Positions 4,244 through 18,096 of a stretch of 64,000 bases of DNA are shown piece after piece. Below the pieces are notes generated by a model that was given only the letters and a program-made list of their open reading frames with translations, did not search any database and had not been told where the DNA came from. The stretch's first letter is position 1; the number at the start of each line of letters is the position of its first letter. The position numbers were made by a program, and so were the translations under genes. The DNA lies in the sequence record NC_016571.1. The stretch is one strand, 5' to 3'.

Positions 4244-7200
4244 ATGATCAAAGAAGATATTCCTCTTTATAAGTTAGACCTTACAGGTACTGACAAGTAT
4301 AACAGAGTTGACCACGAATATGGATACCGAAGAGAAGTAAAGAACAACAACATCGTAATCCCTCCTAAAGGTCCTTTCTACCAGAAGTCATTTAAGATGT
4401 ATGGTAAAGATGGTCAACCTTTAACTATGGATAAGGATTGGGAGTTCTACGGGATCATGGGTAAGTTAACCCAGTTCACCGGTAAACCCGTTGGCCTCTT
4501 TATTCGTATCCTTGATGACTCAATTACCGAATGGTATTGGGATTATCAAGTAGTGGGTAACTTTAATAAGATCACCAATGAAATCCTCAATATGCTTCAC
4601 AGCATTTATGAAGATGACCGTTTTGTTCATTGGGATAATATCGAAAACAAACCACTGTGGTTCATTCCTGAAATCCACCAACATGATCTTGCTTATGAGA
4701 TCTACGGATTTACTGACCTGGTTAAAGAACTGAGTCGTATTTCCGAAATGGAAGTGACGATGTTGCGTGCTGACGCAATCATCATTAAACAGTTGCAGGA
4801 TAACCTGGACTATTACATCGAAGGCTTCAAGAAGGTACTCAAAGATCTGATTGACAGTCACGATCGTAATAAGAAAGATGCTCACGGTGTACGTAAACAA
4901 CACATCGGTCTTGACCTGGTCGATAACTTCGCTACAGCGACTCTAGAGGAAACTCTGGACGGGTTACGTGATGATCTTCACATTACCCCTTATAACGCTG
5001 CACGTGCCGCAGAAGCTGCCGCAGGTCGAAATGAGCGACTGTTCCCATCAGGTTCTTTACCTATCCTGCGTTATGGGTCTGATACATTTATACCTCCAAC
5101 TATCATGGGTAGCTTTGAAGGTTTAGGTGGGATAACCTCACGTTGTGGCGCCATTGTTGAAAACGACGGTACATTGCTTATTCTTAAGCACCGTAACAAT
5201 GGTAAAATCCGTGGCCTGTATTTCACACGCTGTTCTAACTGGCAATCGGGCACTCCTAACTATGAGTTTACCTCTTATGTCTATCAGCACCCAACTGCCA
5301 CGGCAGCAGGTGCAGTATTAGATAGCATCATCGGTGGGTCTAACCAATATGTGATGGTTGTGGGTGACTCTAAGAAGAACCTGTGGTGGTGGGCAGAAAC
5401 TCACGGTACCTTTAACCCAGATGCACACGTCTTGATTCCATTCACAGGACAGTGGACGTCGGCTGATATGGATCCGGCAGCTAACACCCCTGCTGACATT
5501 TATAACTATCAAGGTTTGGCTTCTGTTTGTGCTGACGCTAACTATAAAGAACGTTGGTGTATTGTTCAAGGTTACCCGCTGAATAAAATCTGTGAACGTT
5601 TCCGTCAAGGTGTCATTCCCGATTACGATACGTTAGGAACTTTGGCTTGGGGCGGCGGTGCTGTTATCAATGGTGGGTTCAGTATCAACGTTGTCACCGG
5701 TAATACCATTCAACGCGTCCCTATTGATTACACCCATCCGGTATTTGGTAAGTTCAATGATAACTTCTGGACTCCACATTGGCCAGAAATAGTCGTTGAG
5801 GGTAATGTAAGAAAGATTAAATCTTATTACGCGAATTACCAACCCATGGCAAGATCCGTCCAGACGTATAACTCACCTCGTGCTTTCTGGGGTAAATTGA
5901 GCGGGTCTGGTTATGGTCTTCGAATTGATGCGTATTCCCGTGAATTTACTTTTAGTGGGGTGAACGTCGGCAGGGTAATGTCGATGAAAGCCAAAGTCGA
6001 GTTCGTGGATGTTAACGGTACTTTGACAGCTAAAATTACATCTGTTCCAGGTCAGGATAAGTTATGGACGATTAACCCTGAGGATACCACGGCGACACAA
6101 CTTGAGTGGATTGATTATATCAAGAACTGCACCACCCAGCTTCAATATGTTTCTCAAGATCAGACAGGTCTTGTTCAAATTGGTAGTGGGGTTGGATTTG
6201 GATTGTCAGGTACTGGTAACGTTTCATTCCCTCCAGCATACTCGGCCTTTAAAGCCAGGTTTATGGAATCGGGCGATGACCTCCTGACCCAGGATTATGA
6301 TTCAGCCAACATTACTTACTTCCATCGTTCGTATCGTGAAAACGAACTTAACCCTATAGGTATGGGTTCAATGTTTGCCTCTCAACGTTTCATCGTTGGA
6401 GACTACAAAAACCCAATGACCGCAGGGATAATGGTTCGCCAGTTGAAAGTTGGTAATAACCGACCTGATGGGTATCTGGAATGGTTCTATCGTCCAGTCA
6501 ACTACATGAACACCAACTATGACCACGTCCCGCCTACTCAAGTGTCGACCTTCAACGGCAATGCGATGAAGCACTACCCATTTGTTTCTGATGGGGGGAT
6601 TGTTCAGGGCCTTGGGTTCCAAATGCCGTTGATGATGCAACTTCCTACACCCGGTGCCCCGATTACCAGAAATCAGGAATTACTCAAGTATATCTGTGGA
6701 GCCAGTTCCGGTAGTCGGTTAATGGGCATCACTGATTACAATGAACTTCCAGCAGGCTATCCGGCTGTTCCCATGACGGACTATAAGTTGGTGTGGGAGA
6801 TCACGTCAACCATGTCTGGTAAGTCACCAGTATTCAGCCCGGTTAGTGTGGTCGACATCAGATCACTCATTGGCGCAAATGGATCAGTAGCCAATATGTT
6901 TAAAGCAGCTGGTTACACTCAAGCTGAAATAGACATGACCTGGGTTATGGTCAGAGTTATCAGTCCATCTGGTCAAATGCACGCCATCTGGAAAGTATTC
7001 CGTGTCAAAGCAGATACGATGGAAATCGAATCAGGTGTGTTGGTTACTACCCTAACTGTATCGGGATATACCGCTCCAGCTCCTGGCGTCGTCTATGGGA
7101 CGTATTCTGGTGTTGCAGCAACTCAGCTCTCGCAGGTTCATAAAACCATCAGCGAAGCAAATGCTGTCGGTGTGATTTACACCCTGCCTAAATATGACAG

Positions 7201-7984
7201 GGCCGTGGGTAACACTCCGGGCTATGGTTGGTGTGTGCCGTTCAAGAAACGTCAAACTCCTATCGATGCAGATACTTATACTGTACAGATCGTTCCCGAT
7301 TGTCGTTGGCAGTCGCCAGGTGGACAGACCATGTCACCTAGTACCGTTGAGATTTCTGCCGATGGTCGTACCATCCTTAACCATACCCGTGTCAACACAC
7401 CTGAATGGGGTGCTGATAGCGGTGATACACCAATGCCTTATTACGGTCGTGGTTACGCTGGTCAAGGTCAAAACATTTTCGAAGGGGCAGCAATATCGTG
7501 TTCTGTTAACAGTTACACGACTAACGTGTTCCAAGAAATCTTCCGTGGTCAGTATGAATCACAAATGGTAGTGGGAATGAGTAACATCCTTATCCCGCAA
7601 TATACCATTTATTTCAGTGAGATGAGGAATATCCTACTAGCTGGTAAAATGTATGATATCCCTGCGACATATATCGATTTGTTGGTTCAGGATCCAGCTC
7701 CTCAGAATAAGACGTATTACGTTTACCTTACTTATTCTGGTGGTAAAGCTGAGTACTCTACTTCAACAGAGATTAGACCAGAAACAGCCGCGCAATCTAT
7801 GATTGCTAAAGTTCTTTGTGGACCTACTCAGATCGATAACATTCTCCCGTATAACCGATTCTCTATGGATGGTGCTTCGATTAGTGCAGTCCGTCAGGGT
7901 TCGAGCATTCTTGCTTCCTCTGGCTCATTGTACGAAATTGGTAACACAGATAACATCTTGCTTGATAGTGATTTTATCCCGTAA
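4244..7984 (+). CDS. Tail fibre / baseplate-associated virion protein (phiKZ gp131-like family)
   Basis: 1246 aa with the fibre motif DAHGVRKQHIGLDLVDNFATAT, a PPTIMGSFEGLGG block and a C-terminal IDL..DPAPQNKTYYVYL domain. Confidence 0.7.
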   Translation: MIKEDIPLYKLDLTGTDKYNRVDHEYGYRREVKNNNIVIPPKGPFYQKSFKMYGKDGQPLTMDKDWEFYGIMGKLTQFTGKPVGLFIRILDDSITEWYWDYQVVGNFNKITNEILNMLHSIYEDDRFVHWDNIENKPLWFIPEIHQHDLAYEIYGFTDLVKELSRISEMEVTMLRADAIIIKQLQDNLDYYIEGFKKVLKDLIDSHDRNKKDAHGVRKQHIGLDLVDNFATATLEETLDGLRDDLHITPYNAARAAEAAAGRNERLFPSGSLPILRYGSDTFIPPTIMGSFEGLGGITSRCGAIVENDGTLLILKHRNNGKIRGLYFTRCSNWQSGTPNYEFTSYVYQHPTATAAGAVLDSIIGGSNQYVMVVGDSKKNLWWWAETHGTFNPDAHVLIPFTGQWTSADMDPAANTPADIYNYQGLASVCADANYKERWCIVQGYPLNKICERFRQGVIPDYDTLGTLAWGGGAVINGGFSINVVTGNTIQRVPIDYTHPVFGKFNDNFWTPHWPEIVVEGNVRKIKSYYANYQPMARSVQTYNSPRAFWGKLSGSGYGLRIDAYSREFTFSGVNVGRVMSMKAKVEFVDVNGTLTAKITSVPGQDKLWTINPEDTTATQLEWIDYIKNCTTQLQYVSQDQTGLVQIGSGVGFGLSGTGNVSFPPAYSAFKARFMESGDDLLTQDYDSANITYFHRSYRENELNPIGMGSMFASQRFIVGDYKNPMTAGIMVRQLKVGNNRPDGYLEWFYRPVNYMNTNYDHVPPTQVSTFNGNAMKHYPFVSDGGIVQGLGFQMPLMMQLPTPGAPITRNQELLKYICGASSGSRLMGITDYNELPAGYPAVPMTDYKLVWEITSTMSGKSPVFSPVSVVDIRSLIGANGSVANMFKAAGYTQAEIDMTWVMVRVISPSGQMHAIWKVFRVKADTMEIESGVLVTTLTVSGYTAPAPGVVYGTYSGVAATQLSQVHKTISEANAVGVIYTLPKYDRAVGNTPGYGWCVPFKKRQTPIDADTYTVQIVPDCRWQSPGGQTMSPSTVEISADGRTILNHTRVNTPEWGADSGDTPMPYYGRGYAGQGQNIFEGAAISCSVNSYTTNVFQEIFRGQYESQMVVGMSNILIPQYTIYFSEMRNILLAGKMYDIPATYIDLLVQDPAPQNKTYYVYLTYSGGKAEYSTSTEIRPETAAQSMIAKVLCGPTQIDNILPYNRFSMDGASISAVRQGSSILASSGSLYEIGNTDNILLDSDFIP

Positions 7985-8047: not shown

Positions 8048-11000
8048 ATGAAAGATATTGAAATTATCGACATCGACTATTCTGCCACGGACCCTCTTTA
8101 TAAGAAAGAGGATGATGTTGAAATCGCAAAAATCTCTGGGCCTTTTATAGTGCCTGAAGAAGGCCCTATTTATCAAGACTCCGTAAGGGTCATCGGGAAT
8201 AGCGGTTTAGATTTAATCCCTGGTACGGATTTCGAATGTGTCGAACCAGTAACTGACTTAACCCAAGTCACTGGCAAAGCTGTACACTTATATGTAGAGC
8301 TGAAAGACCATATCGTTGCTTCTGGTGGTAAAGTTAAACTGATCTACCAGCGTGTCGGTAAGCCGGTTATTTCAGTTAAGACACTTCTGAAGATGTTGGA
8401 AGAAATGGTAATTGAAGGGAAATCCATTGACTGGGAAACACAGGTCACTGGTAAACCTTTAACATATCCTCCAGCGTGGCACAGTCACGATATTCAGAAC
8501 AGTAAAGAGCTGGTAGGTTTTGGTGGTTTGGTAGAGCTATTCTCTCGTCTCACTTGGGAACATAAAGAGAGTGGTGAAAAGATGAAGGAACTCATCGAAG
8601 AACTCCAGACCAAAGTGTACGACCGCCTTAACTACATTCAAAAACTGAAGTGGGGTGCCATCATGGCCCACATCAGAAACTATAAAAACCCACACGGTGT
8701 TGTTCCAGCTAACGTTGATGCAGGTAACATTGCTAACAACGCAACTGCAACTCCACAGCAGGATTTGGAAGGTACTCGTACCGACCTATACTCAACGCCT
8801 AAAGGTTTCCGTCAGGCAATTGAGAACGCTGAACCGGTATCTGAAGAATACATCGCTCAGAACGAATTACCATTTGGTTATTATGGTTCTGGGATTTACC
8901 TCCCTCCTCCAATCACAGGTTCGTTTGAAGGTCTGGGTGGTGACGTAGAAAACTCAGCATTCTGTTTGGAAGGTAACGGTTGGTTAGTTGGGTTAATCCG
9001 TGCTTACGATGGTCGTGTTAAAAACCTGTACTATGTTTACAACATGGACTTCAGAGACACTAACCAGACTCGTAGCCCTTGGCTGAACACCTACGCCAAA
9101 TATGATCACCCGGTAACTGGACCAGAACCCACGGATCCAAACGCGCCACCTAAAAAGAATATCAACTTTATTATATCGGGTTCTAACGACTCTGTTATAA
9201 TGGTAGGTTCTCAGGACTCAGGCACCGGCATGGTTGATAATCCTGATAAGTGGTGGATTGGGGTTTCTAACTCAACGTTTGACCCAAACAGCCATACGTT
9301 GAAACCTTTGAACATGGCTGCTATTATGGCCGCTTGTCCTCAGAAGAATCTTACTCCAGGGCATACCACAGTTTCCCATGTAGGTGATTGGGTTTACTTA
9401 TTAGTGGGTCAGGACTCTTTCGAAGGTGACAGTTTAGCTCCGGGCACCGACTATCTTAATTCGCCATCTAACTATCAGGTAAGGATGTTTAGGGTCCCTT
9501 ATAAGGACTTGCTGGATACATCTAAGTTGACTATTAATTTTGTTCCGGTCAATGTAACCTTTGATAACGCGGATCGTCTTCATCGTACTAACCAGGTTGC
9601 TTTCTTCCCAGCCCAGATTAAACGCCCTACTGGCGGCGATCCATATGAAATCACGGGTACCGTTGTCAACTTCACAGCCAAGGTTAGAAACGCATACCTT
9701 AACCGTAAGCTTCAGTTCTTTATTGTTCCTAATCCCAACAATACGAGAATGGCCAAGATGAAAGTCTTGTGCATGCCTTATCAGATATATTACGATCCGG
9801 TACTTGAAGCGTCACGTGGTTTCCAAGCTAACGTCATGATGAGTTACGATTGGGATGTGGCTGCCAACACTATGTCTCTCGACAGTCATTGGATTAAACC
9901 TACCTACGACTCATTAACGGGAAATGTGGTTAACCCTACTCAGGTCCATAACGATTATATCGAAAGTGGTTACTGGGCATGGCACGCTTCTCGATTTGCG
10001 AACGTAGCTGGTTCCTGGGTTCCTGGTTTCGGATTTGTGTCAATGGGTTCTTCTCAGGCTGGTGTTCCTCCGTTTACCTTTGCTTTATCAAGGATAAACA
10101 GGGGCGATGATCCAGCTCAAGACTACGACCATTTCTCTAACTTGCCGATTAACTGGAGTGATAGCGCTGGGGTATTCAACAGCCGTCAGGCTATATTCAG
10201 GATGCGTTCTCCGTTTGGTGTTGCAGGTTTCCCTCGTCACTACAGTCAGTTGTATGCAATGACCGATGGAGTACGTCAATGGCCAATTGAGATATTCTCG
10301 GCTGAGAACGAGGACCAACGTCAACAAACCTTCTACCGTATAACTGAAGGCGGCGCTGATGATAACTATATCTACCGTGACTCATTGAAGTCCAAGTACA
10401 TCCCTACACAAATTAGAGGTCGTAAGACTAACTCTAGTTTTGGCGTGGTAAAAGGACTTAACTACAATGTGGGTTACGTTAACCGCCCTAGACGAGCTAA
10501 CGCCACATCCAGAGGTACTGGATTGATCAGTTGGAAACGACTAAAGGTCCATACTAATCCGGGCGCCCCTTATGAGTTTGGTCAAACAACCAACTATGAT
10601 GGTAATGTGGTAGCTTCAGTTCAAGAGCCGGACGGAAGTCTGTTGGTTAACCTTGATGTAGACTATACCCTGGATCCAGTTGCAAGAACCATATACTGTA
10701 AAGCAAATAAGCTTAAGCAGGTTCGTCTACCTCGTTCATTCTGGGTGGATATGGTCATGCAGGCGCTAGGATCTCATGCCAATGAGCTGATTGATATCGC
10801 CACTAGCTTCTTCATTAACAGAGAGCCTGGAAATAACGCAGATCAAGCTACATCAATGTGGCAGTGTACCTACCATGTTAAATCATCTCCTAGTCGTACA
10901 AGGATGATTATTGGCACCTTTACCTGGGATGTTGCCAGTACGGGTGGTGATGGGATTCGTGTACTGCGTCCAGTCGGGATGAGTTATCCATTTAACGCTA

Positions 11001-11872
11001 AAGCCACAGGTCTCGAAGGTAACTTACTTCGTCCTGGTTCTGCTGATAACACAGTAGTGAATGGACACCATGCTGTCAATGCAGATGGTTCATGGGGTTA
11101 TGTCGAACTTAACTCAGGGCTTGAAGTTAAAGCACAGAACATCCAGATCTTGGACTTTGATGCCGAAGGCCCAAAAGCAAGGGAACAGATTTGGGGACCT
11201 GGTGTAAGAATAGCCACGCCTGGTAACGCCAGCTCAATGAGAGTCTGTTATAGATTCAGGTCTGGTGCTGTTGCCGAAGCTAGCGTGATGTGGGTAAGTG
11301 GTCAGGCATTTAACGCCGAATACAACAACATTGTCTTTGCTAACAAGGACTACGGTTGGATGTACGGTGTAGCTCCACAGATATCAGGTGGTGCGATGGA
11401 TCTCCTATACCCATGGTCCGGAACATACAGAGATCAGCCAACACCTGGCGACTTCTATGTAATGAACGGTGCTACTTACGTTGAGGGCAACTGGTCGATA
11501 TTCATTAACGCTGATGTCCTTGTGACCTTTAATGGTTACAGCATGACAGCTAAGATGACTAACTGGGATCTCCGCGATCTTACCGATGTGTACAGGAGTC
11601 AGATATTCTATATCTACTGCTTCGCCAATGGTTCTGTTGCGGAATATGAGATAACTAAAATCCTTAGACACCATAACTCTAATGGAATTTTAGTTGCCAC
11701 AGTGAGAACGAACGAGCTGGGTATTTTCAGTATTACCCACCGTCAGAGTTTCACTATTAGTGGTTTCCCATTAACCCGTTTACCTGACATGGGTGTTCCA
11801 GTATCCTCTGGTGCTCTTACTGAGCAAGGTACTTATCGATTCTTGAAACGTACTGATCTGTATCAAAACTAA
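8048..11872 (+). CDS. Tail fibre / baseplate-associated virion protein, paralog of 4244-7984
   Basis: 1274 aa with NPHGVVPANVDAGNIANNATAT, PPPITGSFEGLGG and a similar C-terminal domain. Confidence 0.7.
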   Translation: MKDIEIIDIDYSATDPLYKKEDDVEIAKISGPFIVPEEGPIYQDSVRVIGNSGLDLIPGTDFECVEPVTDLTQVTGKAVHLYVELKDHIVASGGKVKLIYQRVGKPVISVKTLLKMLEEMVIEGKSIDWETQVTGKPLTYPPAWHSHDIQNSKELVGFGGLVELFSRLTWEHKESGEKMKELIEELQTKVYDRLNYIQKLKWGAIMAHIRNYKNPHGVVPANVDAGNIANNATATPQQDLEGTRTDLYSTPKGFRQAIENAEPVSEEYIAQNELPFGYYGSGIYLPPPITGSFEGLGGDVENSAFCLEGNGWLVGLIRAYDGRVKNLYYVYNMDFRDTNQTRSPWLNTYAKYDHPVTGPEPTDPNAPPKKNINFIISGSNDSVIMVGSQDSGTGMVDNPDKWWIGVSNSTFDPNSHTLKPLNMAAIMAACPQKNLTPGHTTVSHVGDWVYLLVGQDSFEGDSLAPGTDYLNSPSNYQVRMFRVPYKDLLDTSKLTINFVPVNVTFDNADRLHRTNQVAFFPAQIKRPTGGDPYEITGTVVNFTAKVRNAYLNRKLQFFIVPNPNNTRMAKMKVLCMPYQIYYDPVLEASRGFQANVMMSYDWDVAANTMSLDSHWIKPTYDSLTGNVVNPTQVHNDYIESGYWAWHASRFANVAGSWVPGFGFVSMGSSQAGVPPFTFALSRINRGDDPAQDYDHFSNLPINWSDSAGVFNSRQAIFRMRSPFGVAGFPRHYSQLYAMTDGVRQWPIEIFSAENEDQRQQTFYRITEGGADDNYIYRDSLKSKYIPTQIRGRKTNSSFGVVKGLNYNVGYVNRPRRANATSRGTGLISWKRLKVHTNPGAPYEFGQTTNYDGNVVASVQEPDGSLLVNLDVDYTLDPVARTIYCKANKLKQVRLPRSFWVDMVMQALGSHANELIDIATSFFINREPGNNADQATSMWQCTYHVKSSPSRTRMIIGTFTWDVASTGGDGIRVLRPVGMSYPFNAKATGLEGNLLRPGSADNTVVNGHHAVNADGSWGYVELNSGLEVKAQNIQILDFDAEGPKAREQIWGPGVRIATPGNASSMRVCYRFRSGAVAEASVMWVSGQAFNAEYNNIVFANKDYGWMYGVAPQISGGAMDLLYPWSGTYRDQPTPGDFYVMNGATYVEGNWSIFINADVLVTFNGYSMTAKMTNWDLRDLTDVYRSQIFYIYCFANGSVAEYEITKILRHHNSNGILVATVRTNELGIFSITHRQSFTISGFPLTRLPDMGVPVSSGALTEQGTYRFLKRTDLYQN

Positions 11873-11874
11873 AA

Positions 11875-11901
11875 AGAGATGGGGACTTCGGTCCCCTCTC
11901 T
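11875..11901 (+). promoter_or_regulatory. Intercistronic c(UUCG)g hairpin
   Basis: AGAGA-t-GGGGAC ttcg GTCCCC-TCTCT immediately upstream of the AGGAG SD. Confidence 0.6.
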
Positions 11902-11916
11902 AAACAGGAGCAATCC

Positions 11917-14900
11917 ATGTATGTAGATCCTAATAAACCTCTTCCGCCTGCCGATACAAAGGAAGACTATCTTGGATCCGTTCTTAATGCTGTTATCGAT
12001 ATCAGTAATAAAAGAACAGAAACGCAAGGTACTCCAGAAGAGTATGAGGAGAAGATAGCCGATCAGCAATGGGAAGCTGATCAAAAGTTGGATGCCTTTT
12101 CTAAATGGGCTGATGACACTCTACTTGCCCACACTAATAAGAAAGGTGCGGTTCATGGAGAGACAAAGGCTTCGGTTGGTCTTAATCTAAAAGACAACTG
12201 GCGCATGGCTACTATTCCTGAGCATGAAGCTGGTCAAGCTAAGAACTTGTTCTGCCACCCATTCGGTTCGAAGAAACTAATCGAAGCACGTTTGGTTATC
12301 GATCCTAAGCGTTATATTCGTTCTCGCATTATTCCTATCGCTTCTGGCGGTCAGCTGGGTAACGTACCGCAATGGCCATTCAGTTGGGAAGAGGGTGAAA
12401 TCACTCAGTCCCTGGATGACCCGTTAGAGTTCTACGGTGAAACTCCGTGGCAGTTCTCTACCGATAACGGTGTGTTCCTTATTCCAGCACTGAACGGTGC
12501 AGATATCCTGACGCAGCACGTTGCTGACCCAGGTCGTCCTAAGCGCGCTGTAACGCCATTTGGCGGGACTAATATTCGTGTCTATAATAAGACCTTGGAT
12601 ATACGTCGTAGTCGTCCCTCTCTGCTGCGTGGGGAGAGTAGCGATGAACCAAGTAACTCTTTGATTAAAGGTTCCGCTCACCTGTTTGACAGGCACACAG
12701 CGTTCTATTGTGAGACTGACTACATTGGCGCCCGTGCATTTAACAAAGGTCGCTTACCGTTTGACGTTCTGACTAACAATGGCGTTACCAAGACAAACTG
12801 GGCCGGGATTCTGGAATCTCGTGAAGACATGTTGTACAACATCAATACAACCATGTTTAACGGAAACCTATCTGGCTGGGGTGACGACATTTACCTCATC
12901 TTTGAAATCGGAATGTGGCAATTCAGTCAGACCGGTTTAGATTCCAAAAATGGTTCAGGTCGTCCTGCTGAAACTATTGCTTCTTTAGGTACTAAGGTTG
13001 AGACATTAACCTTCACAGTTCCTGGTAACGGTAAATTCCGTATCCTGAAGCGCGCTGGTAAGTTGGACGCTATTGCAGTTAAGTTCCGTGATATACTGAA
13101 CTATAATGCAGCAGATAAAGATTTGCTGTGGAACCAGTTTAACCATGCTCACTTTACTCACGTAGCCTTTACTTGGCGTAACCGTTTGAAAGGTGACTTC
13201 GCTCTCCGTGTTCCTGTTGGTTTCAGTAGTAAAGATGGTGCTTATTACACCAACTACTATATGGACATCAACTGTCTGATTAAAGAGAACATGGCGACTA
13301 AGTCAGCCACTGTGGTATTCAATACTCTTCGTGAAGTGGATACGAACATTCAGACATTGAACGCTAACTTCCAGGTTACTGCCACAGGTCGTTTCGTTCA
13401 ATACGCCTATAACGTCAAAGGTGATATCTTCCACCCATTGGTGTTTAACGGGACGTTTGAATCTCAAGGTGGTCACGTCAAGGCGTACACGTTCTATAAC
13501 CGTCAGTATGTCGGTTACTATGAACACAACGTTGATGGAGTAGGTACTTGGATCGCTAATGGCGATAACATCAAACCTACCTTGGTTAAGTACAACTACA
13601 GCCAGATCTCCAACCTGAACCAAGATGGGATGTACGGTGACCACTTACGCCATATCCCTGTGAAAGCAAATACTGACGGGACAACCGACTATCTGGTTTA
13701 CAGTCGTGACTGGCGACATCAGTATCGGTGGTGCGTGGTTAATGTTAAGACGGACACCGCTCCTGAAATGCTGACCAGTACAGGTCACCACTTAGGTCCA
13801 TGGCGTAATAAGGTTGAATGGATTAAACCAAGTCAATCAGCGTTACCTTCATTCTTAATTTCCAATGAAGAGAACTCGACTGTCTTTGATACCAGTGCTC
13901 TGGTGTTTAACACACAGAACGCATTCAAAGGCTTCGCTCGGTTTGGTGTTGATGTTTCCAATGCCGCTAATCCAGTTCAGCCTATGGACGAGGTTGATAT
14001 CGATGACCCAATCCTGACTTGGATTGCTAATAATGGTGGTCGTTGGTCTAAAAGTCACAAACAGATGTTCTATTTCAAGAACAGACTGTTCTGGGTTTCT
14101 CAGACTACCGATGTGAGTGAAGTTAAAGCAGATGGTACCGACACGTATTACGGTTGGATCGCTGACTGCTATCTGGACGTCGTAGGTGACAAACGCATTA
14201 TTAAAGTCAGTGGTGCTCTTGCTGACAAAGGTGTTGCTAAGCCACTCAAGGTAAACCTCAAAACCAGTCTTGCTGTTAAGTCTTCGGAAGTAACAGGTTG
14301 GGATGCTTTTGATTCAACAGACGTTTACACGATGCTGATGAGTCAGACGGGTTCCAGAACAAGTTACCTGGTTATGATGAACCTCGCTCCATTTAACAAC
14401 TTCTACTTCGAATTCAAACTGGATATCGATACCGCACTAGCAACAACATCATTCGCTCCATTGAGCACAGGTGCTGTGGATCCAGTGTTCCCTTACGACC
14501 CTACCAATGGGTTCCAGGTAGATTACGACGCAATTACAGGTTACGGTAAGATCGCACCACACCGCTTCCACGTAAACTTCCAGACACCAGTTATGCTGAA
14601 GAAAGCCATGTGGGCATTCAGAAAGACACCTGGTCACTACGGACTGTTTTCACAATCAATCGGGTTTACTGTCGCTGAAGGTGGAGTCATGAACTCTATC
14701 GAAGGGACGCCTATTTATCCCGTTGGTTCTGTCGTAACTATTGGTGGATCTAACGTGGTTGTTAAATCACCAATCAGTGCCGCACAGTCTCAGTTCGGTG
14801 GAGACGAGGAACTACTGATTAAGCAATACGGTAGCTCTGATCCTTCTTTGACCTCTCCTGATGGTCTGACTCTTTACGGAGTTAAGAACAACTACGGGTT

Positions 14901-17058
14901 AGAGACTCAGCCTAACTCAGGTATCAGCCCTTGTGGTTTCTTGAGGAACAACAAGTTCTATCATTATGACCCTAACGGCTGGCGTCATGCTCTCTTACCA
15001 GTAATTGATGGTAAGCGTATGAGCTTCTATGGGTACGGTAACTCGTTCCCTGCCTTCTTAGGTGTCAATGGTTCCGGTGTTCCTGTTAACCGATTCTTCC
15101 TGCAAGCTCAGGCCACGATTATTCAGTGGGCTACTTCAGAAGGTCGTGTTATCTATATCGGTTCCGGTGCAAACATTAACATTGTGATCAGTGGGGAAAC
15201 CCAGAGTTACGCCGGTGGTGGGACGTACACAATACCTGCTAAGTACACAGGTGCTGTGGATATCCAGATTACTGGTCTGATTACTCTGAAGTGGATGCCT
15301 GGTTTCGGTAACCTGAAACAAATCGGTAACACTGTCACTAGACTGGACTTCTCTGAGTCAACACAGTTTACAATTACTTCTCCATTGCCTTCACGCATTA
15401 CTTCACTGCGTGGAACATTCAGAAATGCTAAAGGTGCTCAATACCCGAACATCGAGTCATGGGATACCAAGAACATTACTGACATGGCTGAGTGTTTCCA
15501 AGGGGCAACTGTCTTCAATGGTAACTTGACTAACTGGAACACGTCCGCTGTTACGACCATGGAAGGGATGTTCGATGGCGCTGCTGCGTTTAACCAGGCA
15601 ATCGGTAAATGGAACGTACAACGTGTTGAGACCATGGGTAAAATGTTCAGAGGGGCGACTGGGTTTAAAGCCGACCTTTCTACCTGGAACATTACCCGTT
15701 GTGCTGTATTCGCAGAGATGTTTAAAGGCGCATCCAACTTCAACGGGAACATCAGTACTTGGAACGTTCTGACCTGTTATGACTTTACCAGTATGTTTGA
15801 AGATACCAACCTCTTCAACGGCGATATCTCTAAATGGATTATTACCGGAGCTACACGCTTCAGTAAGATGTTCAAGAATGCGAAAGCATTTAACGGAGCT
15901 ATCAACATCTGGGATATGTCTTCAGCCATTTACATGGATGAGATGTTCAGCGGAGCTAGTGCGTTTAACAGAACTCTGGCTAACTGGAATACCAGTAAAG
16001 TCATCACGACTCGTGAGATGTTCTACAACGCCACCAACTTCGGTAAAGATGCTGCCTTCGTACTGAGTGCTTGGGATATGCGTCTGAACCTTGACTTGAC
16101 CAGAATGTTCGCTAATAGCGGATTCAACTGTAAGGTCGATGGTTGGAGCTTCGGTAAAGATGCGAGTCTGTACGAAATGTTCCTGGGAACCAAAACGTTC
16201 AACCAAGACATCTCTTCTTGGGATGTGGGTAACGTTGATGACTTCTCTGGGATGTTCAAACAGAGCACTGCATTTAAAACCATCATCTCCAATTGGGTAC
16301 TGGCTTCTGTTAGCAAAATGTCTGGTATGTTTACAGCATCGAGCTTCAGTGGAGACCTTATCGATTGGAATATCAGTTCCACTAAAGACATCATGATGGA
16401 CGGTGTGTTTGCTGATGCTCCATTCTTTAACGGAGCAGGTATCGCTACATGGAACACATCTAAAGTAACCACCATGGCAAGAATGTTTGCCAATGCTGTA
16501 ATCTTTAACCGTGACATTACGGGTTGGGATACCAGCAAGGTAACCACGTTCTTTGAAATGTTCCTCAATGCGAAGGCATTCAACCAAGCTATCGGTGTTT
16601 GGGATGTTTCTTCAGGTACTATCTTCCGCAACATGTTACGATTAGCAATTACCTTTGATCAGGATCTTGATAATTGGAACATGAGTAATGCTACAGACAT
16701 TTCTGATATATTCAGAGAAGCTGCTGCGTTTAACGGTAAAGTGGGTGCTTGGGATACATCTAATGTCATCGCGATGAACGGTACATTTGTATCCTGTCCT
16801 AAGTTCAATCAGGACATATCTGGATGGAACGTGTCTAAAGTTGAAAACTTCGTTGGTATGTTTGGTTCGACACTTGTGTTTAACCAGGATATCAGTGGGT
16901 GGAATACTTCATCTGCTACAACCATGGAAGGCATGTTCAATGCTGCAAAAGCATTCAACCAAGACCTGTCTGGTTGGAATGTTGCTAACGTAACTAACCA
17001 CACTAACTTCGATGTGGGTGCTACAGCATGGGTACTTCCAAGACCTAACTTCGTGTAA
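11917..17058 (+). CDS. Tail fibre protein with C-terminal DUF285/BspA-like repeat domain
   Basis: 1713 aa. N-terminal fibre motif GAVHGETKASVGLNLKDN; the C-terminal ~550 aa are 25-aa repeats FNxxIxxW(N/D)xSxVxxMxxMF. Confidence 0.75.
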   Translation: MYVDPNKPLPPADTKEDYLGSVLNAVIDISNKRTETQGTPEEYEEKIADQQWEADQKLDAFSKWADDTLLAHTNKKGAVHGETKASVGLNLKDNWRMATIPEHEAGQAKNLFCHPFGSKKLIEARLVIDPKRYIRSRIIPIASGGQLGNVPQWPFSWEEGEITQSLDDPLEFYGETPWQFSTDNGVFLIPALNGADILTQHVADPGRPKRAVTPFGGTNIRVYNKTLDIRRSRPSLLRGESSDEPSNSLIKGSAHLFDRHTAFYCETDYIGARAFNKGRLPFDVLTNNGVTKTNWAGILESREDMLYNINTTMFNGNLSGWGDDIYLIFEIGMWQFSQTGLDSKNGSGRPAETIASLGTKVETLTFTVPGNGKFRILKRAGKLDAIAVKFRDILNYNAADKDLLWNQFNHAHFTHVAFTWRNRLKGDFALRVPVGFSSKDGAYYTNYYMDINCLIKENMATKSATVVFNTLREVDTNIQTLNANFQVTATGRFVQYAYNVKGDIFHPLVFNGTFESQGGHVKAYTFYNRQYVGYYEHNVDGVGTWIANGDNIKPTLVKYNYSQISNLNQDGMYGDHLRHIPVKANTDGTTDYLVYSRDWRHQYRWCVVNVKTDTAPEMLTSTGHHLGPWRNKVEWIKPSQSALPSFLISNEENSTVFDTSALVFNTQNAFKGFARFGVDVSNAANPVQPMDEVDIDDPILTWIANNGGRWSKSHKQMFYFKNRLFWVSQTTDVSEVKADGTDTYYGWIADCYLDVVGDKRIIKVSGALADKGVAKPLKVNLKTSLAVKSSEVTGWDAFDSTDVYTMLMSQTGSRTSYLVMMNLAPFNNFYFEFKLDIDTALATTSFAPLSTGAVDPVFPYDPTNGFQVDYDAITGYGKIAPHRFHVNFQTPVMLKKAMWAFRKTPGHYGLFSQSIGFTVAEGGVMNSIEGTPIYPVGSVVTIGGSNVVVKSPISAAQSQFGGDEELLIKQYGSSDPSLTSPDGLTLYGVKNNYGLETQPNSGISPCGFLRNNKFYHYDPNGWRHALLPVIDGKRMSFYGYGNSFPAFLGVNGSGVPVNRFFLQAQATIIQWATSEGRVIYIGSGANINIVISGETQSYAGGGTYTIPAKYTGAVDIQITGLITLKWMPGFGNLKQIGNTVTRLDFSESTQFTITSPLPSRITSLRGTFRNAKGAQYPNIESWDTKNITDMAECFQGATVFNGNLTNWNTSAVTTMEGMFDGAAAFNQAIGKWNVQRVETMGKMFRGATGFKADLSTWNITRCAVFAEMFKGASNFNGNISTWNVLTCYDFTSMFEDTNLFNGDISKWIITGATRFSKMFKNAKAFNGAINIWDMSSAIYMDEMFSGASAFNRTLANWNTSKVITTREMFYNATNFGKDAAFVLSAWDMRLNLDLTRMFANSGFNCKVDGWSFGKDASLYEMFLGTKTFNQDISSWDVGNVDDFSGMFKQSTAFKTIISNWVLASVSKMSGMFTASSFSGDLIDWNISSTKDIMMDGVFADAPFFNGAGIATWNTSKVTTMARMFANAVIFNRDITGWDTSKVTTFFEMFLNAKAFNQAIGVWDVSSGTIFRNMLRLAITFDQDLDNWNMSNATDISDIFREAAAFNGKVGAWDTSNVIAMNGTFVSCPKFNQDISGWNVSKVENFVGMFGSTLVFNQDISGWNTSSATTMEGMFNAAKAFNQDLSGWNVANVTNHTNFDVGATAWVLPRPNFV
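15394..17010 (+). repeat. About 21 tandem DUF285/BspA-type ~25-aa coding repeats
   Basis: Counted 21 W-anchored repeats from WDTKNITDMAECF to WNVANVTNHTNF. Confidence 0.85.
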
Positions 17059-17068
17059 ACGACATATA

Positions 17069-17100
17069 CTCCCTACCCTTCCTTGCGGAGGGGTAGGGGG
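17069..17100. terminator. Hairpin between convergent genes (probable bidirectional terminator)
   Basis: CTCCCTACCCTTCC ttgc GGAGGGGTAGGGGG, flanked by ACATA (17062) and TTATG (17102). Confidence 0.7.
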
Positions 17101-17115
17101 GTTATGCTTATGTTA

Positions 17116-18096
17116 TTATGCTGACGGGGTATCTGTTTTACTACCACCAGACTGAACACCACCATGTCGGTGACCGAGGTAACGAATGTTGTCAATGGTC
17201 CAGCCACCTTCAACGCTACCTGCTCCACCAAACTGACTGAATGCTCCTTGAATACCGACGTTACCTTGTACGGTGTAGTTACCCAGTTGGTTATAGTTCC
17301 CTTCGTGAGTAACATTGCCCTTCATATAGATTTCAGGAGAAACCAAAGAGGTCTTCTGAGTTTCCATGCTGATGGACTTATCAGCTTTCAAGCTAAGATC
17401 AGTACATTGGATATCGATCTTATCTTTACCCTTCAGTAACATATTCTTTTCACAAGAAAGGGTGATATCTTTCTTTTCAATATTAATGAAAGACTTCTCA
17501 TCATTAATGAAACTTAAAGCATGCGCCATAGAGTTCAGAGATAAGATATTATTCTCACCATCCACAATACTGAACTTCCCTTCACCTGTATTCAATTCGA
17601 ATGCATATGAAGTAGGCTCCCCATTCCCCTGTCCAGTTAAGAGCTGAATCTTCTTCTGGTGAGTGGAGAGTAAAAGCATGTAATAGTTTTCAGGTGTAAC
17701 TGGTGTGTTCTCATCTACGTTAGGTGACGCAGAGAAAGCCCAGATTATCGTCTCAAGACGCAGAGTCCCATCCATACCAAAGTAAGTCCATAAATACTTG
17801 CTCGTACCTTGGAACTTGTAGACGACTACCTTACTACCTTTACGAACATCCGGAGCTGTTACACGGTTAGTGTTTAAAGCCATCCATTTAGCAGGTACGG
17901 TGTTACTCTGTAAAGAACTACTGGATTGAGTATCACCTGTAGGTGTCAGCGTCGAGGTATTTTTAGTTTCTACCGTCGTCGTTACTTCACCATCGGATTC
18001 TGGGAACAAACCCTTGATATGGATTTGTACCTCATCAGTGTCAACGTCCTTGTCCATAGCGACAACGCCGACACCGTAGCATTCTAACACATTCAT
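17116..18096 (-). CDS. Baseplate central spike protein (gpV/gp5-like)
   Basis: N-terminal OB-like region (GVGVVAMDKD; APDVRKGSKVVVY), beta-helix-like repeats and C-terminal RYLGHRHGGVQSGGSKTDTP with the HxH tip motif (17164-17172). Confidence 0.8.
   Translation of the reverse strand: MNVLECYGVGVVAMDKDVDTDEVQIHIKGLFPESDGEVTTTVETKNTSTLTPTGDTQSSSSLQSNTVPAKWMALNTNRVTAPDVRKGSKVVVYKFQGTSKYLWTYFGMDGTLRLETIIWAFSASPNVDENTPVTPENYYMLLLSTHQKKIQLLTGQGNGEPTSYAFELNTGEGKFSIVDGENNILSLNSMAHALSFINDEKSFINIEKKDITLSCEKNMLLKGKDKIDIQCTDLSLKADKSISMETQKTSLVSPEIYMKGNVTHEGNYNQLGNYTVQGNVGIQGAFSQFGGAGSVEGGWTIDNIRYLGHRHGGVQSGGSKTDTPSA

What the first reader, a model, noticed from the sequence alone, without database searches (positions are those of the whole stretch)
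15060..17058. DUF285/BspA-like repeat solenoid grafted onto the end of a phage tail fibre
Seen: the protein first completes the family's C-terminal domain (VIDGKRMSFYGYGNSFPAFLG, matching SMDGASISAVRQGSSILASSG and TISGFPLTRLPDMGVPVSSG at the true ends of its two paralogs). It then continues past ~15100 into a short beta domain and ~21 repeats of FNxxIxxWxxSxVxxMxxMF, capped by PRPNFV. Established: these repeats occur mainly in bacterial surface proteins (Mollicutes DUF285, BspA-like) and some large viruses, where they form variable binding surfaces. Inference: a receptor-binding module of LRR-like type, possibly binding a protein receptor, a host surface adhesin or eukaryotic mucosa, unlike the usual beta-helix or knob fibre tips.
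Basis: partly seen in the sequence, partly recalled or inferred. Interest (0 to 1): 0.7.

Follow-up and report, generated by a model that had tools for sequence, protein, structure and literature searches.

The report
Repeat solenoid on jumbo-phage baseplate protein
The last 650 residues of a 1713-residue protein of Pseudomonas jumbo phage OBP really are a 21-unit DUF285/PARCEL (leucine-rich-repeat-like) solenoid, but this is the normal, old architecture of that gene in the whole OBP-like phage group rather than a special graft, and its presumed role as a host-binding tip is still untested.

Summary
The window is Pseudomonas phage OBP (JN627160, bases 124001-188000). The finding lies in OBP_145, an intact 1713-aa ORF (window 11917-17058).

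**Confirmed**
- Residues 1179-1704 are about 21 tandem 25-residue DUF285/PARCEL repeats (PF03382, E 3.5e-155).
- AlphaFold2 predicts a confident LRR-like solenoid.
- A roughly 118-aa beta linker precedes the repeats.

**Not supported: a special graft**
- The same body + linker + repeat protein sits in the same gene slot in Kc263, AH04, pEt-SU, N1M2 and LAh10.
- It recurs in 36 of 40 related protein clusters, always with the same junction.
- The three closest relatives (73-79% identical) all carry it.
- The slot is nevertheless modular. Five Aeromonas phages and three metagenomic relatives stop at the junction, one relative carries an unrelated 684-aa module, and EL, Miami and Joad share only the first ~140 residues.

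**Relation to gp143/gp144**
- Sequence profiles link gp145 to them only at residues 19-142.
- The quoted C-terminal motif match is not significant.
- The predicted fold of the 1060-aa body does resemble that family.

**Best reading (inferred)**
A baseplate-attached peripheral protein with a variable, distal ligand-binding solenoid. Presence in the virion and binding are unproven. Interest is moderate.

The parts
11917..17058 (+). OBP_145 (gp145), intact 1713-aa ORF; GenBank AEV89582.1 'hypothetical protein'
   Evidence: 100% match to JN627160.1 135917-141058
11881..11910 (+). Small GC hairpin (11881-11896) followed by an AGGAG ribosome-binding site (11906-11910), 6 nt upstream of the ATG
   Evidence: read directly from the sequence
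11971..12342 (+). N-terminal anchor segment, residues 19-142. It is helical at 18-73, followed by a conserved His/Gly-rich motif. This is the only part with sequence homology to gp143/gp144, and it is shared with the slot-3 proteins of EL, Miami, Joad, Goslar and phiKp24
   Evidence: hhalign E 1.8e-7 and 2.5e-8; tblastn found 78 phage records; PHROG tail families
12343..15096 (+). Beta-rich body, residues 143-1060. The predicted fold resembles tandem beta-propellers. It ends at a conserved junction where module-less orthologues stop
   Evidence: AF2 pLDDT 76.6, pTM 0.72; Foldseek versus PDB finds DDB1-type multi-propellers, E about 5e-8 with low TM; Foldseek versus BFVD finds Joad gp99/gp100 and other jumbo-phage virion structural proteins, E 1e-14 to 7e-21; junction
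15097..15450 (+). Linker, residues 1061-1178. It is predicted beta-stranded, specific to this clade, and always travels with the repeats
   Evidence: 36-83% identical in all repeat-bearing orthologues; no phmmer hit in 120 bacterial DUF285 proteins; low-confidence strands in the model
15451..17028 (+). DUF285/PARCEL repeat array, residues 1179-1704: 20 full units plus 1 partial unit of about 25 aa, predicted as an LRR-like solenoid
   Evidence: (pLDDT mostly above 90)
17029..17058 (+). Nine-residue C-terminal tail (ends in PRPNFV) plus the stop codon
   Evidence: the tail is retained in orthologues (BLAST alignments reach their last residues)
17069..17100 (.). 14-bp GC-rich hairpin between the convergent genes gp145 and gp146; likely a bidirectional terminator
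4244..7984 (+). gp143 (1246 aa), slot-1 protein, 'putative virion structural protein'
   Evidence: full-length paralogue of gp144 (hhalign E 5e-70)
8048..11872 (+). gp144 (1274 aa), slot-2 protein, 'putative virion structural protein'
17116..18096 (-). gp146, baseplate assembly protein (phrog_3216, E 1e-101), convergent neighbour

Best explanation
gp145 is the third of three tandem, distantly related large proteins (gp143, gp144, gp145). They are encoded between virion-structural genes and the baseplate-assembly gene of OBP-like jumbo phages.

It has four parts:
- A helical N-terminal segment (about residues 19-142) shared with gp143/gp144 and with the same-slot proteins of many related jumbo phages. 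It most likely docks the protein on the baseplate periphery.
- A roughly 900-residue beta-propeller-like body.
- A conserved junction followed by a clade-specific beta linker.
- A solenoid of about 21 DUF285/PARCEL units with an LRR-like fold. This most likely forms the outermost, monomeric ligand-binding surface, acting as a host-cell adhesin or receptor-binding part.

Within the solenoid, periodic hydrophobic positions build the core and periodic exposed positions vary.

Shown:
- the domain anatomy;
- conservation of the fusion across the clade;
- variable array length;
- loss or replacement of the module at one fixed junction;
- periodic placement of substitutions.

Inferred:
- presence in the virion;
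- attachment through the N-terminal segment;
- binding of a host surface molecule.
For: - **Identity and context:**
- **Repeats:**
- **Solenoid model:** pLDDT 82.7 overall and above 90 across most of the array. It gives local 3Di matches to LRR ectodomains.
- **Synteny:** the same slot, with gp141-gp147 order conserved, in Kc263, AH04, pEt-SU, N1M2, LAh10, PS1, Miami, EL and Joad.
- **Conserved fusion:** the junction is the same in 36 of the 40 related clusters.
- **Modularity:** array length varies from about 15 to about 45 units. PS1-type phages and P0141, P0145 and P0146 stop 7-9 residues after the junction. P0160 carries an unrelated 684-aa module there.
- **N-terminal segment:** homologous to gp143/gp144. 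It recurs in 78 phage records, some annotated as minor tail, short tail fibre or tail fibre proteins.
- **Body fold:** matches proteins annotated as virion structural in Joad, CBB, SEGD1, Kwan and Derbicus.
- **Divergence pattern:** in the three closest relatives the repeats are the most diverged region (61-76% identity against 72-79% for the body). Substitutions concentrate at repeat registers 17, 20, 21 and 3, while W4 and F22 never change.
- **Expression signals:** a good ribosome-binding site and a terminator hairpin.
- **No export signal:** no signal peptide or lipobox is visible at the N-terminus, unlike bacterial PARCEL lipoproteins (PMC2996958).
- **Analogy only:** in phiKZ, paralogous fibre proteins share N-terminal segments that form a helical bundle on the baseplate periphery (PMC13250141). 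Two DUF285 proteins are packaged in Aureococcus virus particles (PMC7507832).
Against: - The OBP GenBank record calls gp143 and gp144 'putative virion structural protein' but gp145 only 'hypothetical protein'. The OBP proteome paper (PMC3264338) is not held, so gp145 may not have been detected in particles.
- The shallow RisingSun lysate proteome lists none of the three slot proteins.
- The body is predicted as globular and propeller-like, not as a classical trimeric fibre shaft. 'Tail fibre' is therefore loose wording.
- No solved structure or functional study of any DUF285 domain was found.
- No sequence link to phiKZ fibre proteins was found.
- The extra divergence of the repeats over the body is modest, and it is absent in phage Survivor (50% versus 53%).
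Confidence: 0.55

Rival explanations
1. The protein is in the virion but is not the primary receptor binder. In this reading the solenoid is an accessory adhesin for weak, reversible attachment to abundant surface or matrix polymers (capsule, exopolysaccharide, biofilm matrix), or simply a spacer. The receptor-specific step would be carried out by gp143/gp144 or by other proteins.
For: - Natural relatives do without the module altogether: PS1-type Aeromonas phages and P0141, P0145 and P0146. It is therefore dispensable in some lineages.
- The array is long and its length is plastic, about 15 to 45 units, as expected for an avidity or reach element.
- Its divergence is only moderately above that of the body.
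- Other relatives carry several further DUF285 loci (3-8 places per record in N1M2, D3 and LAh10).
Against: - The module is kept, with the same junction, over deep divergence (30-50% identity) and across hosts from six or more genera.
- Substitutions are periodic on presumably exposed registers, which points to a specific binding face.
Confidence: 0.25
2. The protein is not a virion component. It would act inside or on the infected cell, for example by binding a host protein or modifying the cell surface, and would only happen to sit in the structural gene block.
For: - gp145 lacks the 'virion structural' label that its neighbours carry in the OBP record.
- LRR-like solenoids are generic protein-binding scaffolds.
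- No proteomic evidence was found for any orthologue.
Against: - The N-terminal segment is shared with proteins annotated as tail, tail fibre or virion structural.
- The body's fold matches virion structural proteins.
- The position between structural genes and the baseplate gene is fixed in every relative examined.
- C-terminal module exchange at a fixed junction is the hallmark of adsorption proteins.
Confidence: 0.12
3. One reading: a recent, OBP-specific graft of a bacterial surface-protein module onto a fibre that relatives carry without it.
For: - Bacterial surface proteins, mostly Bacteroidota and Planctomycetota with sorting, cadherin or PKD domains, are the nearest non-phage relatives of the repeats at 30-42% identity.
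- A few relatives lack the module.
Against: - All three closest relatives and 36 of the 40 related clusters have it at the same junction.
- The linker is clade-specific.
- The DNA repeats are only 61-74% alike and Tandem Repeats Finder is silent, so the array is old.
- GC content of the region equals that of its surroundings.
Confidence: 0.03

Closest known systems
DUF285 / PARCEL repeat proteins (Pfam PF03382; TIGR02167; Roske et al. 2010, PMC2996958)
   Same: Tandem 25-residue amphipathic repeats with invariant aromatic core positions. Scores lie far above both curated thresholds. Long antisense ORFs lie in the repeat DNA, as that paper notes for many PARCELs. The family occurs in bacteria, protists, giant viruses and many phages.
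   Different: There is no signal peptide, lipobox or sorting domain. The array sits at the C-terminus of a 1060-aa phage structural-type body behind a clade-specific linker. The family itself has no assigned function and no solved structure.
[quoted passage not shown]
   Same: Same gene slot, same body, same junction, same linker and the same kind of array.
   Different: Body identity is 35-57%. Arrays range from about 15 to about 45 units. None has been studied functionally in the papers held.
OBP gp143/gp144 family (phrog_3573) and the same-slot proteins of EL (ORF114-116), Joad (gp99-101) and Miami (056-058)
   Same: Tandem arrangement, shared N-terminal segment, and similar predicted whole-body fold.
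   Different: gp145 lacks the first ~150 residues of gp143/gp144. It has no detectable sequence similarity beyond residue ~209 or at the C-terminus. It alone carries the repeat module.
phiKZ tail-fibre paralogues gp131/133/134/135 (PMC13250141)
   Same: A set of adjacent paralogues that share N-terminal segments, differ in their C-terminal parts, and include a beta-propeller domain thought to bind the host. This offers a plausible architectural analogy.
   Different: No sequence or PDB match was found. The analogy rests on the paper's description, not on a test here.
Canonical leucine-rich-repeat ectodomains (plant receptor kinases, Toll-like receptors, LGR4/5)
   Same: Local solenoid geometry, with Foldseek probability 0.9-1.0 and E about 1e-5.
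   Different: Global TM is only 0.12-0.18 and identity 7-11%. No LRR Pfam model matches. Similarity is at the level of fold class, not family.

Membership tests
DUF285 / PARCEL (PF03382, TIGR02167) | Match to the curated profiles above their thresholds | tested here: met
   PF03382 scores 508 bits against 25. TIGR02167 scores 95.4 bits against 30.
DUF285 / PARCEL (PF03382, TIGR02167) | Tandem array of ~25-residue amphipathic units with conserved hydrophobic core and variable hydrophilic positions | tested here: met
   There are 21 units, 17 of them exactly 25 aa. Among those 17, W at register 4 occurs in 17/17, F at 22 in 16/17, F at 16 in 15/17 and M at 15 in 13/17. Registers 13 and 17 are the most variable.
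DUF285 / PARCEL (PF03382, TIGR02167) | Dyad symmetry of the coding DNA / overlapping antisense ORFs (PMC2996958) | tested here: inconclusive
   Antisense ORFs of 221 and 203 aa lie inside the array. The inverted-repeat scan found only two weak 18-19-nt pairs.
Mbov_0838-type PARCEL surface lipoprotein (NF045896) | Score above the curated cut-off | tested here: not met
   326 bits against a cut-off of 500. No lipobox is visible at the N-terminus.
Other Pfam LRR families (including the LRR family of Tannerella BspA, recalled from memory) | Match to a Pfam LRR model other than DUF285 | tested here: not met
   Only PF03382 is reported at E <= 0.01. The NCBI product name 'BspA family' on orthologues is a naming convention, not evidence of that family.
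Phage tail fibre / receptor-binding protein | Encoded within the tail/baseplate gene block | tested here: met
   The gene lies between gp141-144 (virion structural) and gp146 (baseplate assembly). The order is conserved in nine phages.
Phage tail fibre / receptor-binding protein | Conserved N-terminal attachment part with exchangeable distal C-terminal part | tested here: met
   The N-terminal segment is shared. At one fixed junction the C-terminal module is DUF285, absent, or an unrelated 684-aa module.
Phage tail fibre / receptor-binding protein | Elongated trimeric shaft (coiled coil, beta-helix or triple beta-spiral) | tested here: not met
   Only residues 18-73 are helical. The body is predicted as globular and propeller-like, and the tip as a single-chain solenoid. 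Oligomeric state could not be modelled.
Phage tail fibre / receptor-binding protein | Physical presence in the virion | not testable with these tools
   The OBP proteome paper is not held. The GenBank product is 'hypothetical protein'. No proteomic data for orthologues were found.
Phage tail fibre / receptor-binding protein | Binds a host surface receptor | not testable with these tools
   No data. No paper in the library links DUF285 to phage adsorption.
gp143/gp144 family (phrog_3573) | Sequence-profile match over the body | tested here: not met
   gp145 has no phrog_3573 hit. hhalign aligns only residues 19-142, or up to 209. The C-terminal comparison gives P about 0.09.
gp143/gp144 family (phrog_3573) | Same overall fold | tested here: met
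   Foldseek of the body model gives E 7e-21 and 4e-18 against Joad gp99 and gp100, and E 1e-16 against a 1246-aa entry. TM is 0.36-0.39 over about 1200 columns. This compares predicted models with predicted models.

The most novel reading that the evidence does not exclude
The DUF285/PARCEL solenoid would be a previously unrecognised class of phage receptor-binding domain. It would be a single-chain, LRR-like array mounted on a beta-propeller body of a jumbo-phage baseplate protein, tunable in length from about 15 to 45 turns and swappable at a fixed junction. That would also give the first functional and structural handle on a 'domain of unknown function' that fills thousands of bacterial surface proteins, 115 phage records and some giant-virus genomes.
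Probability: 0.35. Interest if true: 0.6.

Novelty: new member of a known kind. Interest (0 to 1): 0.4.

Why it matters
**Adsorption of jumbo phages.** How nucleus-forming jumbo phages of the EL/OBP branch adsorb is poorly known. This gene trio is a conserved candidate for their peripheral baseplate or fibre apparatus. Slot 3 is the variable member.

**A family without function or structure.** DUF285/PARCEL is abundant, yet no function is assigned and I found no solved structure for it. A phage protein in which it sits at the likely host-contact end would be a convenient system for learning what such solenoids bind.

**Annotation.** OBP_145 and several orthologues are still labelled 'hypothetical'. 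They can be annotated as a baseplate-associated PARCEL-repeat protein. The natural variants without the module, or with a different one, define the domain boundary precisely.

Tried and rejected
- **BLASTP of gp145 against gp143/gp144.** Only a 70-120-aa N-terminal match was found. The 'paralogue' idea looked wrong until the fold search.
I tested it with sliced profiles and it is not significant.
- **The beta linker as a standard DUF285 N-cap.** I suspected it might come with bacterial modules, but phmmer against 120 bacterial DUF285 proteins found nothing. I dropped the idea.
- **Solved structures.** Three sequence or profile searches with the body or the gp143 family and two with the repeats found no relative. 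No sequence link to phiKZ fibre proteins could be made.
- **P0160's alternative 684-aa module.** It has no Pfam, PHROG or PDB match.
- **The gene downstream of P0145.** It did not match OBP gp146, so I used that locus only to show that no repeat ORF follows on the same strand.
- **Virion evidence.** The OBP proteome paper is not held. Papers on ZPAH34, N1M2, AerS_266, RisingSun and phiKp24 say nothing on this protein.
- **DNA-level repeats.** Tandem Repeats Finder found no 75-nt array and the copies are 61-74% alike. I therefore rejected recent expansion or slippage-driven variation.
Full report
**Where we are**

The 5142-bp ORF matches Pseudomonas phage OBP (JN627160.1, 135917-141058) at 100%. 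The window therefore covers bases 124001-188000 of this 285-kb jumbo phage of P. fluorescens. The ORF is OBP_145, annotated 'hypothetical protein'.

Its upstream neighbours gp141-gp144 are annotated 'putative virion structural protein'. Its convergent downstream neighbour gp146 is a baseplate assembly protein (phrog_3216, E 1e-101). PHROGs already holds the protein as phrog_17273.

The gene is intact: one ORF of 1713 codons. It has an AGGAG ribosome-binding site 6 nt before the ATG and a 14-bp GC-rich hairpin after the stop.

- Pfam DUF285 (PF03382) matches at E 3.5e-155, 508 bits against a cut-off of 25.
- NCBIfam TIGR02167, now named 'PARCEL repeat-containing surface protein', also passes its cut-off.
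- Anchoring on the invariant tryptophan gives 20 full units of 24-29 residues, 17 of them exactly 25, plus one partial unit. They span residues 1179-1704 and are followed by a nine-residue tail.
- Among the 17 canonical units, W at register 4 is present in 17, F at 22 in 16, F at 16 in 15, and M at 15 and N at 23 in 13 each. Registers 13 and 17 are the most variable.
- AlphaFold2 on residues 1041-1713, with 30 DUF285 proteins as alignment, gives pLDDT 82.7 and pTM 0.77. Most of the array is above 90.
- Foldseek against the PDB returns only LRR ectodomains (plant receptor kinases, Toll-like receptors, LGR4/5, SHOC2). Probabilities are near 1, but TM is 0.12-0.18 and identity 7-11%. The array is LRR-like in local geometry and matches no solved protein closely.
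- Neither the sequence nor a 31-sequence profile finds any PDB chain. I found no solved DUF285 structure.
- The ~118 residues between body and array are predicted as strands, at low confidence.

**It is not a special graft**

tblastn of the first 1060 residues and of the last 653 residues against 50,697 phage records finds both halves contiguous in the following phages:
- Kosakonia Kc263, Erwinia AH04, Klebsiella N1M2, Serratia Sureiya and Yubaba;
- Shewanella SXP01, Pantoea Survivor, Edwardsiella pEt-SU;
- Aeromonas LAh10, D3, D6, D9 and AhC3_1.

In the five of these whose annotated neighbourhoods I fetched (Kc263, AH04, pEt-SU, N1M2, LAh10), the orthologue sits in the same slot of the same gene order and is 1689 to 2311 aa long.

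In the 5.8-billion-protein collection the body occurs in 41 clusters, one of which is OBP's own protein. Of the 40 relatives:
- 36 carry linker plus repeats, with the junction at the same point;
- three end at the junction;
- one carries an unrelated C-terminal module.

The three closest relatives (73-79% identical) all carry linker plus repeats. The repeat DNA copies are only 61-74% alike, Tandem Repeats Finder finds no array, and GC content is unremarkable. The fusion is old.

That criterion is essentially met.

**The slot is nevertheless modular**

- Aeromonas phage PS1 has a 1174-aa orthologue that ends at the junction. Seven Aeromonas records have the body but no DUF285 hit anywhere: PS1, PS2, AVP1, ACP1 and pAEv1810, counting RefSeq copies.
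- Three metagenomic relatives (P0141, P0145, P0146; 54-55% identical) stop 7-9 residues after the junction, with a real stop codon. In one of them the next gene is on the opposite strand.
- P0160 continues from the same junction into an unrelated, non-repetitive 684-aa module with no Pfam, PHROG or PDB match.
- Array length ranges from about 15 to about 45 units.
- Further out, EL ORF116 (956 aa), Miami_058 (1071 aa) and Joad gp101 occupy the same slot but share only the first ~140 residues.

A conserved attachment end combined with exchange of distal parts at fixed junctions is how phage adsorption proteins evolve.

**Relation to gp143 and gp144**

gp143 and gp144 are full-length paralogues of each other (hhalign E 5e-70).

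Sequence profiles link gp145 to them only at residues 19-142, extending to 209 with a deeper alignment (E 2e-7 to 2.5e-8). gp145 lacks their first ~150 residues.

Sliced C-terminal profiles give P about 0.09 over 6-8 columns, against 3.7e-18 for gp143 versus gp144. That stretch of the model is also below pLDDT 50.

The AlphaFold2 model of residues 1-1060 (pLDDT 76.6, pTM 0.72; helices 18-73, then about 850 residues of strands) behaves differently:
- Against the PDB it resembles multi-propeller proteins such as DDB1, with E about 5e-8 but low TM.
- Against predicted viral structures it matches, after its own orthologues, the 1168- and 1172-aa 'putative virion structural proteins' of Joad (E 7e-21 and 4e-18). 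These are Joad gp99 and gp100, the slot-1 and slot-2 proteins.
- It also matches a 1246-aa entry of the same length as gp143 (E 1e-16), and structural proteins of CBB, SEGD1, Kwan and Derbicus.

The body is therefore a remote paralogue at fold level, and it is complete before the linker starts.

**Signs of a binding surface**

Against the three closest relatives, identity is:
- 78-82% in the N-terminal segment;
- 72-79% in the body;
- 65-84% in the linker;
- 61-76% in the repeats.

Differences in the repeats pile up at registers 20 (75% of sites), 21 (61%), 17 (59%) and 3 (53%). Registers 4 and 22 never change. More distant relatives mostly show the same ordering, for example N1M2 at 54% for the body against 32% for the C-terminal part. 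Survivor does not, at 50% against 53%. This fits a fixed core with a variable exposed stripe, but the effect is moderate.

**What is not known**

I found no evidence that gp145 is in the particle. The OBP proteome paper is not held, and the record's wording sets gp145 apart from its neighbours. Papers on relatives are silent.

No paper in the library connects DUF285 with phage adsorption. The nearest precedent is that two DUF285 proteins are packaged in Aureococcus virus particles.

The family description (PARCEL, PMC2996958) treats these repeats as variable amphipathic surface modules spread by horizontal transfer. It notes antisense ORFs in the coding DNA, and such ORFs are present here.

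The phiKZ atlas (PMC13250141) describes adjacent fibre paralogues that share N-terminal segments forming a helical bundle on the baseplate periphery. This is an attractive analogy for gp143-145, but no sequence link was found.

**Verdict**

Most likely (about 0.55), gp145 is a baseplate-attached peripheral protein whose PARCEL solenoid is the distal host-binding part. An accessory, non-specific adhesin role (0.25) and a non-virion role (0.12) remain open. A recent OBP-specific graft is very unlikely (0.03).

The feature is a member of a known repeat family, in a published genome, with orthologues already labelled as such. The open question is function. Interest is moderate.

No gene in this region is broken, and I built no repaired or consensus sequence.

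Noticed in passing
window 15922-16587 (-) and 16023-16634 (-): Two long antisense ORFs (221 and 203 aa) lie entirely inside the repeat-coding DNA. Their translation is also roughly 25-residue periodic. The PARCEL paper reports such opposite-strand ORFs as a common property of these repeats. They are probably a by-product, not genes.
   Followed up: partly
L010:10994-13045 (metagenomic contig SRR31860671_85667; protein P0160): An orthologue of gp145 carries, from the same junction onward, an unrelated non-repetitive 684-aa C-terminal module with no Pfam, PHROG or PDB match. It is an orphan candidate binding module.
   Followed up: partly
L006:16989-19469 (Aeromonas phage LAh10_53): [quoted passage not shown] This is probably a mislabel carried over from the neighbouring gene.
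   Followed up: no
protein P0152: A 1708-aa orthologue is recorded by NCBI under Salmonella enterica on a 267-kb contig. This suggests an OBP-like jumbo phage genome sitting in a bacterial assembly.
   Followed up: no
Vibrio phages vB_pir03, C-ZP2022 and vB_VpaM_sm033 (PMC7765460): These jumbo phages have 34-35 separate DUF285 matches per genome. One is a 19-kb ORF annotated as PARCEL. The module is much more expanded there than in OBP, which has a single locus.
   Followed up: no
L002:14116-14700 (-) (Kosakonia phage Kc263): Kc263 has an extra 194-aa gene between the gp145 orthologue and the baseplate gene. It is absent in OBP, AH04 and pEt-SU.
   Followed up: no
window 17069-17100: A strong 14-bp GC-rich hairpin lies between the convergent genes gp145 and gp146. 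No clear T-run follows on the + strand. It is a likely bidirectional terminator.
   Followed up: partly
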